Sequence record: PQ464590.1
Length of the DNA stretch: 64,000 nucleotides
Direction: 5' to 3' (one strand)
Below are positions 16,391 to 17,017 of this stretch, piece by piece. Position numbers and translations under genes: made by a program. A model generated the notes under the pieces. That model saw only the letters and a program-made list of their open reading frames with translations. It ran no database searches and was not told the origin of the DNA. Within the stretch, counting starts at the first letter, position 1. Each line of letters begins with the position of its first letter.

Positions 16391-17017
16391 TTATGCGTTC
16401 ACGCCGTTTTTAGCTTCCAGGGTAGCGGCTGCCGCCTCTTTGTCTACCGCGTACTTGGTAATGAATGCCGCACGGTCATCGCCAAACTCAGCAGATACAC
16501 GCTCTTTCCAAATGTTCGGCATGTTGCCAGTAGTAGGCATGTCGTATGCTTCGCCGTTGAAATCAATCGCTACGCGGTTGAACGTGAACGACTTTTCAGA
16601 TTTAGCAGGGTACTTTTTAGCCATCGCCGTGTCTACCATACCCTGTGCCACTTCCAGATCCAGGCCCATCTTTTCAACGATGTCTTTCAACATGTTTTCC
16701 GCTTCCTGTTTACGGGCTGCCAGTTCTGCCGCGTTCTCAGCTTCACGCTGTGCTTTACGGGTCGCCAGGGTGTCATTCAGTTTTGCCAGGCGTGCGATTT
16801 TGTTCGCTTCTTTCTGCTCTGCGGCTTCTTTCTGGCGGGTCTTAACCTGCTCTTTCGCGGACTTCACAGCCAGGGAGAAATTCAGCCCCATCTTCTGTAC
16901 CAGTGCAACCGCATCATCACCACCAGCAGCGATAGCCAGGTCAGTCAGTTTAGTTGCCAGTACTTCCACATTACCAGATTCGATAGCAGCTTTCAGAGTT
17001 ACGATTGATTTAGACAT
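16391..17017 (-). CDS. divergent H-NS/StpA-like protein
   Basis: Manual alignment: LAKL..coiled coil..GLD..PAK, then IDFNGEAYDMPTTGNMP..K..G..F versus H-NS [18 protein letters not shown]..G..F. Confidence 0.6.
   Translation of the reverse strand: MSKSIVTLKAAIESGNVEVLATKLTDLAIAAGGDDAVALVQKMGLNFSLAVKSAKEQVKTRQKEAAEQKEANKIARLAKLNDTLATRKAQREAENAAELAARKQEAENMLKDIVEKMGLDLEVAQGMVDTAMAKKYPAKSEKSFTFNRVAIDFNGEAYDMPTTGNMPNIWKERVSAEFGDDRAAFITKYAVDKEAAAATLEAKNGVNA

What the first reader, a model, noticed from the sequence alone, without database searches (positions are those of the whole stretch)
16391..17017. Early H-NS-like protein with a rewritten DNA-binding motif
Manual alignment with E. coli H-NS as recalled: LAKLNDTLATRKAQREAENAAELAARKQ...MGLD...PAK versus [28 protein letters not shown]...DGID...PAK. 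The C-domain IDFNGEAYDMPTTGNMPNIWK..FG.....FI aligns with [21 protein letters not shown]..QG.....FL. The minor-groove motif TWTGQGR becomes DMPTTGN, losing the Trp and Arg, and there is an extra ~65-aa N-terminus. Established: T7 gp5.5, T4 Arn and LUZ24 Mip antagonise H-NS-family silencers. Inference: a dominant-negative H-NS mimic, or a re-specified nucleoid protein and possible reader of AGTACT.
Basis: partly seen in the sequence, partly recalled or inferred. Interest (0 to 1): 0.75.

Follow-up and report, generated by a model that had tools for sequence, protein, structure and literature searches.

The report
Divergent H-NS-like protein of jumbo phage
An early gene of the 366-kb Erwinia phage Hallingskeid, with counterparts in every genus of Rak2-like giant phage sampled here, encodes a very divergent relative of the bacterial DNA-silencing protein H-NS. 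Its DNA-contact loop carries Gly-Asn, as in Pseudomonas MvaT, instead of Gly-Arg, so these lytic phages probably bring their own nucleoid protein.

Summary
The ORF is real: 16391-17017, minus strand, 208 aa, annotated "hypothetical" in Erwinia phage Hallingskeid.

Similarity to H-NS is above chance but only visible with profiles.
- BLASTP, Pfam and HMM-versus-PDB searches find nothing.
- hhalign of the 45-member phage family against an H-NS alignment gives 94.6% probability and P=7e-8. Reversed and shuffled controls score 12-22 against 52.
- Four disjoint subfamilies each reproduce the hit.
- The short RaK2/PBECO4-type orthologues align with H-NS residues 20-137. GenBank already notes a 97.2% HHpred hit to StpA for the Muenster orthologue.
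- Most language-model neighbours of residues 96-208 (88 of 100) carry an H-NS or MvaT domain.
- Fold searches are weak and inconclusive.

The C-terminal domain is the best-conserved part. G164 is invariant and N165 is present in 43 of 45 members. They sit where H-NS has G113-R114, the same replacement MvaT uses to contact the minor groove. The motif was probably retuned, not lost.

The "extra 65-aa N-terminus" is really a ~30-aa insertion in the central coiled coil.

My best reading is an oligomerising, DNA-binding early nucleoid protein. A dominant-negative role and AGTACT reading remain untested. I rate it a new variant of a known kind, of moderate interest.

The parts
16391..17017 (-). Complete CDS, 208 aa plus stop: the H-NS-like early protein (Hallingskeid CDS0051).
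   Evidence: ORF list and sequence. Identical to PQ464590.1 CDS0051. Family of 49 representatives at 50% identity among 1.84 billion proteins.
16832..17017 (-). N-terminal helical region, residues 1-62, with the conserved V-T-L-K/N-S motif. Probably the equivalent of the H-NS N-terminal dimerisation domain, but very divergent.
   Evidence: No direct hhalign signal to H-NS 1-48. It is homologous to the N-terminus of the short RaK2-type subfamily (99.9%). That subfamily aligns to H-NS 20-137 and nearly reaches the Pfam Histone_HNS_N cutoff (P0047, E=2.1e-4). Language-model neighbours of residues 1-100 are H-NS N-terminal-domain clusters; this is a lead only.
16706..16831 (-). Central coiled coil, residues 63-104. 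It contains a ~30-aa insertion (about residues 66-98) relative to the short family members.
   Evidence: AF2 models one long helix over residues 17-117. The insertion is seen in the family alignment and in hhalign.
16619..16705 (-). Helix-turn-helix, residues 105-133, around the G118-L-D120 turn. It aligns to the H-NS central (site 2) dimerisation element, residues 57-83.
   Evidence: hhalign of residues 96-136 against H-NS 45-90 gives P=1.5e-5; the reversed control scores 6.4. G118 is present in 40 of the 45 aligned members.
16577..16618 (-). Basic linker, residues 134-147.
   Evidence: Over the slightly wider slice measured (about residues 132-149), the family-wide net charge averages +3.3 (range 0 to +6). 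This is the least conserved segment. AF2 leaves residues 136-147 without helix or strand, with mean pLDDT of 62-63 over residues 131-150 and below 50 at 141-143.
16448..16576 (-). C-terminal domain, residues 148-190: beta-hairpin, loop, helix, short helix. It aligns to the H-NS DNA-binding domain, residues 97-136.
   Evidence: hhalign of linker plus C-terminal domain gives P=1.3e-4 in the same register. The AF2 domain model has pLDDT 83, with elements in the same order as the published H-NS C-terminal domain (recalled, not measured here). It is the most conserved region, 2.4-2.5 bits per column. The Atlas shape search puts an H-NS cluster first (51 residues, 3.1 A) but with TM only 0.41.
16517..16534 (-). 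Loop T162-T-G164-N165-M-P167, opposite H-NS T110-G-Q-G113-R114-T-P116. This is the putative minor-groove contact ('half hook').
   Evidence: Register from hhalign. G is found in 45 of 45 members and N in 43 of 45; one member has G-R. The role of MvaT Gly99-Asn100 is from PMC4466236.
17066..17094 (-). Sigma70-like promoter upstream of the gene: TTGACG, 17-nt spacer with TG, then AATACT. An AGTACT copy overlaps the -35 element.
   Evidence: Consensus scan, 9 of 12 matches with TG, and the sequence itself. Consensus match only; function is inferred.
17025..17029 (-). Ribosome-binding site GAGGA, 7 nt before the ATG.
   Evidence: Read directly from the sequence.

Best explanation
Shown here:
- The gene encodes a highly divergent member of the H-NS/StpA/MvaT superfamily of nucleoid-associated proteins.
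- A family member was found in every Rak2-like ('group 2.2') jumbo-phage genus sampled here.
- In most deposited records with defined ends the gene lies within about 1-8 kb of the left genome end. In three records it lies inside an annotated terminal repeat.

Architecture (from alignment and model): a divergent N-terminal helical domain, a lengthened coiled coil, an H-NS-like site-2 helix-turn-helix, a basic linker, and a small hairpin-plus-helix C-terminal domain.

Inferred mechanism:
- The protein is made early from a host-type sigma70-like promoter.
- It self-associates through its helical half into dimers or filaments.
- It binds DNA through the basic linker and the C-terminal domain. The invariant G164-N165 loop would contact the minor groove the way Gly99-Asn100 of MvaT does. 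The conserved R148 and K171 would add contacts.

Inferred and less certain:
- Its substrate is AT-rich DNA. The phage is about 40% G+C and should itself be a target of host H-NS.
- It may coat or organise the incoming phage genome, and compete with or co-polymerise into host H-NS filaments, so that phage promoters escape silencing.
For: Homology to H-NS:
Reversed and shuffled controls score far lower.
- Two modules are separately significant and colinear: coil plus helix-turn-helix at 1.5e-5, and linker plus C-terminal domain at 1.3e-4.
- Four disjoint subfamilies each hit H-NS 52-137 at 79-94.5%.
- The short subfamily aligns to H-NS 20-137 at 91.3%. It is a full-length homologue of the window protein (99.9%).
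- Pfam Histone_HNS_N matches P0047 at E=2.1e-4.
- The GenBank note on the Muenster orthologue records a 97.2% HHpred hit to NP_417155.1, which is StpA.
- 88 of the 100 nearest Atlas clusters by language-model features carry Histone_HNS, Histone_HNS_N or MvaT_DBD.

DNA binding retained:
- The C-terminal domain is the most conserved region. G164 is in 45 of 45 members, N165 in 43 of 45, R148 and K171 each in 38 of 45. The linker averages +3.3.
- MvaT Gly99-Asn100 make the minor-groove contacts (PMC4466236).
- One relative fuses the module to a DNA-methyltransferase domain.

Early expression and context:
- The gene has a sigma70-like promoter and sits among small same-strand genes.
- It lies within 1-8 kb of the left end in 13 deposited genomes, and inside an annotated terminal repeat in CBB, fENko-Kae01 and Muenster.
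- Window G+C is 36-43%.
Against: - No Pfam Histone_HNS (PF00816) or MvaT_DBD hit was found in any of the 45 members at E<=10.
- The HMM against PDB sequences lists H-NS only at E=2.
- Foldseek (PDB, AFDB) and VIA-align give no significant match. The Salmonella H-NS C-terminal domain 2l93 ranks 46th with E=4.5.
- The Atlas shape match has TM 0.41, similar to unrelated rows.
- The window protein's C-terminal domain is net acidic, by my count from the sequence.
- Trp109 and Arg114 of H-NS are absent.
- DNA binding, oligomerisation, timing of expression and any contact with host H-NS are all untested.
- The methyltransferase fusion rests on a single 2.9-kb assembled contig.
Confidence: 0.6

Rival explanations
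1. Dominant-negative H-NS mimic. The protein keeps an H-NS-compatible dimerisation surface but has a disabled DNA-binding loop. It poisons host H-NS filaments and de-represses or disorganises the nucleoid, in the manner of H-NST or functionally like T7 gp5.5.
For: The site-2-like helix-turn-helix is the part that aligns well with H-NS. Trp and Arg of the H-NS motif are gone. The gene is early and close to the left genome end in most deposited relatives. The phage DNA is AT-rich and a likely H-NS target.
Against: A disabled domain should drift. Instead the C-terminal domain and its loop are the best-conserved parts of the family. Gly-Asn is a working minor-groove contact in MvaT. Known truncated antagonists lack the C-terminal domain (PMC7074111). 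No interaction test was possible.
Confidence: 0.15
2. Re-specified, sequence-selective reader of AGTACT. The family binds the hexamer that is 15-27-fold over-represented in these phages and built into their early promoters. It would act as a phage-specific chromatin mark reader or as a switch that shuts early promoters.
For: AGTACT occurs 327 times in the window against 22 expected. Two copies 20-22 bp apart flank the -35 and abut the -10 of repeated early promoters. The excess is present at every locus carrying a family member, including distant metagenomic ones, and in RaK2, 121Q, Muenster and K64-1, which also encode orthologues. One relative is fused to a DNA methyltransferase.
Against: The motif and the protein are both clade-wide, so co-occurrence may only reflect shared ancestry. 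H-NS and MvaT-type domains read minor-groove shape with low specificity; a 6-bp palindrome with two G:C pairs is an unusual target for them (general knowledge and PMC4466236). These genomes encode hundreds of other uncharacterised proteins that could read the motif.
Confidence: 0.12
3. Chance resemblance: a generic coiled-coil protein with an unrelated small C-terminal domain that is not homologous to H-NS.
For: No Pfam, BLASTP or HMM-versus-PDB hit. No significant structural match. Coiled-coil composition can inflate profile scores; one reversed control reached 29.5.
Against: The C-terminal domain alone, which has no coiled coil, aligns in the same register (P=1.3e-4 to 5e-4, reversed controls 9). 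Four independent subfamilies agree. The short subfamily covers H-NS 20-137. Independent HHpred and language-model neighbours point to the same family.
Confidence: 0.08

Closest known systems
H-NS and StpA of Enterobacterales (Pfam PF22470 plus PF00816)
   Same: The domain order is colinear: helical oligomerisation half with a G-(I/L)-D helix-turn-helix, then a basic linker, then a hairpin-loop-helix C-terminal domain. hhalign gives 94.6% for the family and 91.3% over H-NS 20-137 for the short orthologues. HHpred gives 97.2% to StpA in a GenBank note.
   Different: Below the Pfam thresholds. The Q/RGR hook and Trp109 are replaced, with (T/R/K/S)-G-N-M in their place. The window protein has a ~30-aa longer coiled coil and an extra C-terminal helix. 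It is encoded by a lytic jumbo phage.
MvaT/MvaU of Pseudomonas (Pfam PF22055 MvaT_DBD)
   Same: Gly-Asn sits in the loop after the hairpin, where H-NS has Gly-Arg. In MvaT, Gly99-Asn100 enter the minor groove and an upstream Arg80 plus lysines complete the contact (PMC4466236). The phage family likewise conserves R148 before the hairpin and K171 after the loop. MvaT_DBD clusters are among the language-model neighbours.
   Different: No Pfam MvaT_DBD hit. The spacing from the hairpin turn to G-N equals that of H-NS; MvaT is one residue shorter by my recollection of its sequence, which no tool checked. No tool-supplied MvaT sequence was available for a direct comparison.
H-NS and Lsr2 homologues carried by mobile elements (phage EPV1 H-NS, plasmid Sfh/Acr2/Pmr, actinophage Lsr2, CgpS)
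   Same: A xenogeneic-silencer-type protein carried by a mobile element, proposed to modulate host silencing or defence (PMC3097231; PMC7074111).
   Different: Those are listed in that review as full-length H-NS- or Lsr2-family homologues. Most come from plasmids or temperate elements; EPV1 is a metagenome-assembled phage. This family is far more divergent and was found in every genus sampled of a clade of virulent ~350-kb phages. tblastn of E. coli H-NS against 50,697 records in the phage collection found only one record, a mis-filed Salmonella contig.
Anti-H-NS proteins: H-NST, Ler, T7 gp5.5, T4 Arn, LUZ24 Mip
   Same: A possible functional outcome: relief from, or takeover of, H-NS/MvaT silencing early in infection.
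   Different: H-NST lacks the C-terminal domain and Ler lacks the H-NS N-terminal domain (PMC7074111). From general knowledge, gp5.5, Arn and Mip are small unrelated proteins; they were not compared here. This protein keeps both halves under conservation.

Membership tests
H-NS family (H-NS/StpA) | C-terminal DNA-binding domain recognised by Pfam Histone_HNS (PF00816) | tested here: not met
   No PF00816 hit for the window protein or any of 45 family members at E<=10. Profile-profile similarity in the right register only (P=1.3e-4 to 5e-4).
H-NS family (H-NS/StpA) | Fold of the C-terminal domain: two-strand hairpin, loop, alpha-helix, short helix | tested here: inconclusive
   The AF2 domain model (pLDDT 83) has these elements in this order. 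The first Atlas shape row is an H-NS cluster (51 residues, 3.1 A, TM 0.41). Foldseek and VIA-align give no significant match; 2l93 has E=4.5.
H-NS family (H-NS/StpA) | Central (site 2) dimerisation helix-turn-helix | tested here: met
   Residues 96-136 against H-NS 45-90 give P=1.5e-5; the reversed control scores 6.4. The conserved G118-x-D120 lies opposite G69-I-D71. Similarity by sequence profile only; dimerisation was not tested.
H-NS family (H-NS/StpA) | N-terminal (site 1) dimerisation domain (Pfam Histone_HNS_N) | tested here: inconclusive
   No direct signal for the window protein. The orthologous short subfamily aligns from H-NS residue 20. P0047 scores 21.5 bits against a cutoff of 24.5. 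Language-model neighbours agree.
H-NS family (H-NS/StpA) | AT-hook-like Q/R-G-R motif in the loop | tested here: not met
   The loop is T-T-G-N-M-P. N165 lies opposite R114. One of 45 members has G-R.
H-NS family (H-NS/StpA) | Binding and bridging of AT-rich DNA; silencing | not testable with these tools
   Needs EMSA, ChIP-seq, bridging assays and complementation of an hns mutant.
MvaT family | Pfam MvaT_DBD (PF22055) | tested here: not met
   No hit at E<=10 in any member. MvaT_DBD clusters appear only among language-model neighbours.
MvaT family | Gly-Asn of loop 2 plus an upstream Arg (the 'AT-pincer') and a lysine network | tested here: inconclusive
   G-N is present and nearly invariant. 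R148 and K171 are each conserved in 38 of 45 members, and the linker is basic. Equivalence to MvaT Arg80 and the lysines rests on the paper's description, not on an alignment or structure.
Truncated H-NS antagonists (H-NST type) | N-terminal oligomerisation domain only; no DNA-binding domain | tested here: not met
   Apart from a 63-aa C-terminal fragment (P0053), the 44 other aligned members keep both a helical half and the conserved C-terminal domain, in 151-249 aa or, in two cases, as the C-terminal part of a ~386-aa protein.

The most novel reading that the evidence does not exclude
The Rak2-like jumbo phages may run a private chromatin system. An H-NS-derived protein, with its hook rebuilt as Arg...Gly-Asn, would recognise the clade-specific palindrome AGTACT. 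That palindrome occurs about 4-9 times per kb at the early-region loci and 2-4 per kb elsewhere, and two copies are embedded in each of the repeated early promoters examined. The protein would mark phage DNA as self and switch early promoters off as it accumulates.
Probability: 0.1. Interest if true: 0.85.

Novelty: new variant of a known kind. Interest (0 to 1): 0.55.

Why it matters
H-NS-type silencers are the main bacterial brake on AT-rich foreign DNA. The known phage answers are small, unrelated inhibitors (T7 gp5.5, T4 Arn, LUZ24 Mip).

Here, every genus sampled of a clade of virulent ~350-kb phages carries, usually near the left genome end, its own H-NS-derived protein. The helical half and the DNA-contact domain are both conserved, and the contact loop has converged on, or shares, the MvaT solution.

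If this protein binds DNA, it would be a phage-encoded nucleoid protein of a lytic phage. It would also be a natural experiment in how the H-NS hook can be rebuilt, and a handle on how non-nucleus-forming jumbo phages protect and organise a very large AT-rich genome.

The family is currently PHROG 'unknown function' and 'hypothetical protein' in most of the records inspected. Only a GenBank note on one orthologue hints at the relationship.

Tried and rejected
- Pairwise BLASTP against E. coli H-NS found only 6- and 12-residue chance fragments (E=3.2 and 11).
- Pfam, NCBIfam and PHROGs gave only PHROG 20181 and 27871, both of unknown function.
- phmmer and three family profiles against PDB sequences: a repetitive engineered protein A construct scored E=3.3e-4 from five weak repeats and is spurious. 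H-NS 3nr7 appeared only at E=2.
- The full-length AF2 model in Foldseek is dominated by the long helix and found nothing.
- The domain-only model found nothing significant in Foldseek PDB, VIA-align wide, the VIA-align second look, AFDB Swiss-Prot or AFDB clusters.
- Two attempts to widen the H-NS profile returned only >79%-identical Enterobacterales sequences: the search for homologous proteins and the search for related loci on genomes. Diversity came from six plasmid H-NS genes instead.
- Eight long proteins (635-3344 aa) among the exhaustive-search hits match in 5-12 short stretches each. For seven of them the best stretch covers only the hairpin and loop; in the four scanned they scatter weak Pfam hits. 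I treated them as spurious repeats.
- No direct comparison with MvaT was made, because no tool supplied an MvaT sequence and I did not type one.
- Neighbouring genes have no Pfam hits, so no Hha-like partner was recognised.
- AGTACT co-occurrence was considered as evidence for specificity and rejected as non-independent.

Full report
**What is there**

The window is the first 64 kb of Erwinia phage Hallingskeid (PQ464590.1, 366,158 bp). Window coordinates equal record coordinates. The flagged ORF runs from 16391 to 17017 on the minus strand and encodes 208 aa. It has a GAGGA ribosome-binding site, and it is annotated CDS0051, 'hypothetical protein'.

The gene sits in a long run of small genes, nearly all on the same strand and nearly all of unknown function. 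Upstream is a sigma70-like promoter: TTGACG, a 17-nt spacer with TG, then AATACT. According to its description paper, Hallingskeid is a 'group 2.2' jumbo myovirus related to Rak2, CBB and EJP2, with Dam and Dcm methylation. That paper says nothing about this gene (PMC11780129).

**The family**

tblastn and database searches find relatives only in ~350-kb Rak2-like phages and in metagenomes. An exhaustive HMMER search with the C-terminal profile finds 49 representatives at 50% identity among 1.84 billion proteins.
- Most are 150-250 aa.
- Eight long repeat proteins match in 5-12 short stretches each, mostly over the hairpin and loop only, and I treat them as spurious.

A short subfamily (~150-166 aa) turns out to be the orthologue in RaK2, K64-1, Muenster, PBECO4 and other Asteriusvirus phages. 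Every genus of the clade sampled here therefore has a member.

In 13 distinct deposited genomes the gene lies within about 1-8 kb of the left end. In CBB, fENko-Kae01 and Muenster it lies inside an annotated terminal repeat. In other records, including Hallingskeid itself, it lies elsewhere, which may only reflect where each record was opened.

The Hallingskeid subfamily and the short subfamily are full-length homologues: hhalign gives 99.9% and P=5.5e-33. The window protein is longer because of a ~30-aa insertion in the central helix (about residues 66-98) plus 7 aa. It does not have an extra N-terminal domain.

**Is it H-NS-like?**

Simple methods say no:
- BLASTP against E. coli H-NS (sequence from NC_000913.3) finds nothing.
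- Pfam has no hit for the window protein.
- The family profile against PDB sequences lists H-NS 3nr7 only at E=2.

Profile-profile comparison says yes:
- The 45-member family (A4) against a 14-member H-NS alignment (A5, chromosomal plus six plasmid genes) gives 94.6% probability, P=7e-8 and score 52.1 over 87 columns.
- Controls score far lower. Reversed profiles give 18.6 and 22.3; sixty column-shuffled templates have mean 12 and maximum 20.9.

The signal splits into two separately significant, colinear parts:
- coiled coil plus helix-turn-helix against H-NS 45-90, P=1.5e-5;
- linker plus C-terminal domain, P=1.3e-4.

The first 97 residues give nothing directly.

Several further lines agree:
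- Four disjoint subfamilies each hit H-NS 52-137 at 79-94.5%.
- The short subfamily, with only five sequences, aligns over H-NS 20-137 at 91.3%.
- One short member, P0047, reaches 21.5 bits on Pfam Histone_HNS_N against a cutoff of 24.5.
- The GenBank record of Klebsiella phage Muenster annotates its orthologue as 'putative DNA-binding protein, Hhpred hit to NP_417155.1 97.2% probability'. NP_417155.1 is StpA, the H-NS paralogue.
- For residues 96-208, 88 of the 100 nearest ESM Atlas clusters by language-model features carry Histone_HNS, Histone_HNS_N or MvaT_DBD. The scores (0.63-0.69) count only as leads.

**Structure**

AF2 models a short helix, a ~100-residue helix, a helix-turn-helix, a loosely modelled linker, and then a hairpin, loop, helix and short helix, plus one extra helix. 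The domain-only model has pLDDT 83. The order of elements matches the H-NS C-terminal domain in the hhalign register.

The fold searches do not confirm the fold:
- Foldseek on PDB puts Salmonella H-NS 2l93 at rank 46 with E=4.5.
- VIA-align and the AFDB searches find nothing.
- The Atlas shape search lists an H-NS cluster first (51 residues at 3.1 A), but TM is 0.41, like the unrelated rows below it.

For a ~45-residue domain compared with NMR ensembles this is inconclusive, not negative. It is still the weakest leg of the case.

**The 'rewritten' motif**

In the alignment, T-W-T-G-Q-G-R of H-NS lies opposite D-M-P-T-T-G-N. Trp109 and Arg114 are indeed replaced.

The loop is nevertheless the most conserved feature of the family:
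- G164 is present in 45 of 45 members and N165 in 43 of 45. One member has G-R.
- The residue before G164 is T, R, K or S.
- R148, just before the hairpin, and K171 are each present in 38 of 45 members.
- The C-terminal domain carries 2.4-2.5 bits per column, against 1.5-1.9 elsewhere.
- The linker averages +3.3 net charge.

Ding et al. showed that in MvaT the backbone of Gly99-Asn100 and the Asn100 side chain enter the minor groove. Asn100 takes the place of the last Arg of Q/RGR. Arg80, upstream of the domain, and a lysine network supply the rest (PMC4466236). The phage motif therefore looks like a known working alternative, not a dead hook.

One relative (P0035) fuses the coiled coil and C-terminal module to a domain matching PHROG 799 'DNA methyltransferase' (E=4.6e-14). 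That fits a DNA-targeting role, but it rests on a single 2.9-kb contig.

**Most likely mechanism**

The family assignment is shown. The rest is inferred.

I infer an early protein that oligomerises through its helical half. It would bind DNA through the linker and the C-terminal domain, with the Gly-Asn loop in the minor groove.

The window is 36-43% G+C. From general knowledge the Erwinia host is considerably more GC-rich, which would make the phage a natural H-NS target.

I therefore favour a phage nucleoid protein that coats or organises phage DNA and competes with, or mixes into, host H-NS filaments.

A pure dominant-negative is less likely, because a disabled domain would not be the best-conserved part of the protein.

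**AGTACT**

The hexamer occurs 327 times in the window against 22 expected. In repeated early promoters two copies lie 20-22 bp apart, one just upstream of or overlapping the -35 and one abutting the -10.

The excess is 7-27-fold at every other locus that carries a family member, 15-fold or more at 13 of the 15. It is also present at the RaK2, 121Q, Muenster and K64-1 loci examined.

Both features are clade-wide, so their co-occurrence says nothing on its own. No paper in the library mentions the motif in jumbo phages. The link to this protein remains a speculation worth one experiment.

**Novelty**

- Phage- and plasmid-borne H-NS homologues are known, for example EPV1 and Sfh (PMC3097231; PMC7074111).
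- tblastn of E. coli H-NS against 50,697 records in the phage collection finds only one record, a mis-filed Salmonella contig.
- Two jumbo-phage comparative reviews do not mention H-NS.
- The only prior trace found is the GenBank note on Muenster and a 'DNA-binding protein' label on K64-1.

I rate this a new variant of a known kind, of moderate interest.

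Noticed in passing
whole window; e.g. pairs at 9721/9743, 11345/11367, 12165/12187, 14090/14112, 17824/17844, 18290/18310: AGTACT occurs 327 times against 22 expected. In early intergenic regions two copies 20 or 22 bp apart are built into repeated sigma70-like promoters on the minus strand (AGTACT-A-TTGACA...AGTACT-GG-CATAAT, and AGTAC-TTGCAT...CAGTACTG-TATAAT). The same 5- to 27-fold excess is seen in every Rak2-like phage locus examined, including RaK2, 121Q, Muenster and K64-1. 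No explanation was found in the literature held.
   Followed up: partly
window 15522-15773 (-), CDS0049; L005:2594-2863, L009:1950-2219, L112:3166-3435, L003:2646-2846: A conserved 66-89-aa gene lies one or two genes downstream of the H-NS-like gene in Hallingskeid, BF, CBB, GAP32, XbC2, Kaldavass, Muenster, K64-1 and EJP2. Most copies carry a K-P-I-S-G-(A/G)-(F/Y) motif near the C-terminus. tblastn to the window gives E=2e-6 to 7e-10. There is no Pfam hit. It could be a functional partner.
   Followed up: partly
L107:588-1748 (P0035, metagenome contig SRR26961863): A 386-aa protein joins an N-terminal domain matching PHROG 799 'DNA methyltransferase' and PHROG 5172 to the coiled coil and C-terminal module of this family. 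It is a possible natural fusion, seen on one 2.9-kb contig only.
   Followed up: partly
window 18804-19187 (-), CDS0058; L008:2341-3003 (XbC2_3): CDS0058 is homologous to XbC2_3 (tblastn, 38% identity, E=2e-21). XbC2_3 lies two genes from the H-NS-like gene in XbC2 and Kaldavass. This is a second conserved neighbour of unknown function.
   Followed up: no
window about 20000-32000: GC skew flips from about -0.09 to +0.2 and G+C drops to 36-39%. This coincides with the switch to plus-strand genes, including the two annotated 'regulator of chromosome condensation' proteins (23542-25890).
   Followed up: no
P0049 (249 aa) and P0057 (388 aa), distant family members: These are the two members that lack Asn after the invariant Gly. 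P0049 has K-G-R, an H-NS-like Gly-Arg. P0057 has R-G-F and a long, low-complexity, Lys/Ala-rich N-terminal extension.
   Followed up: no
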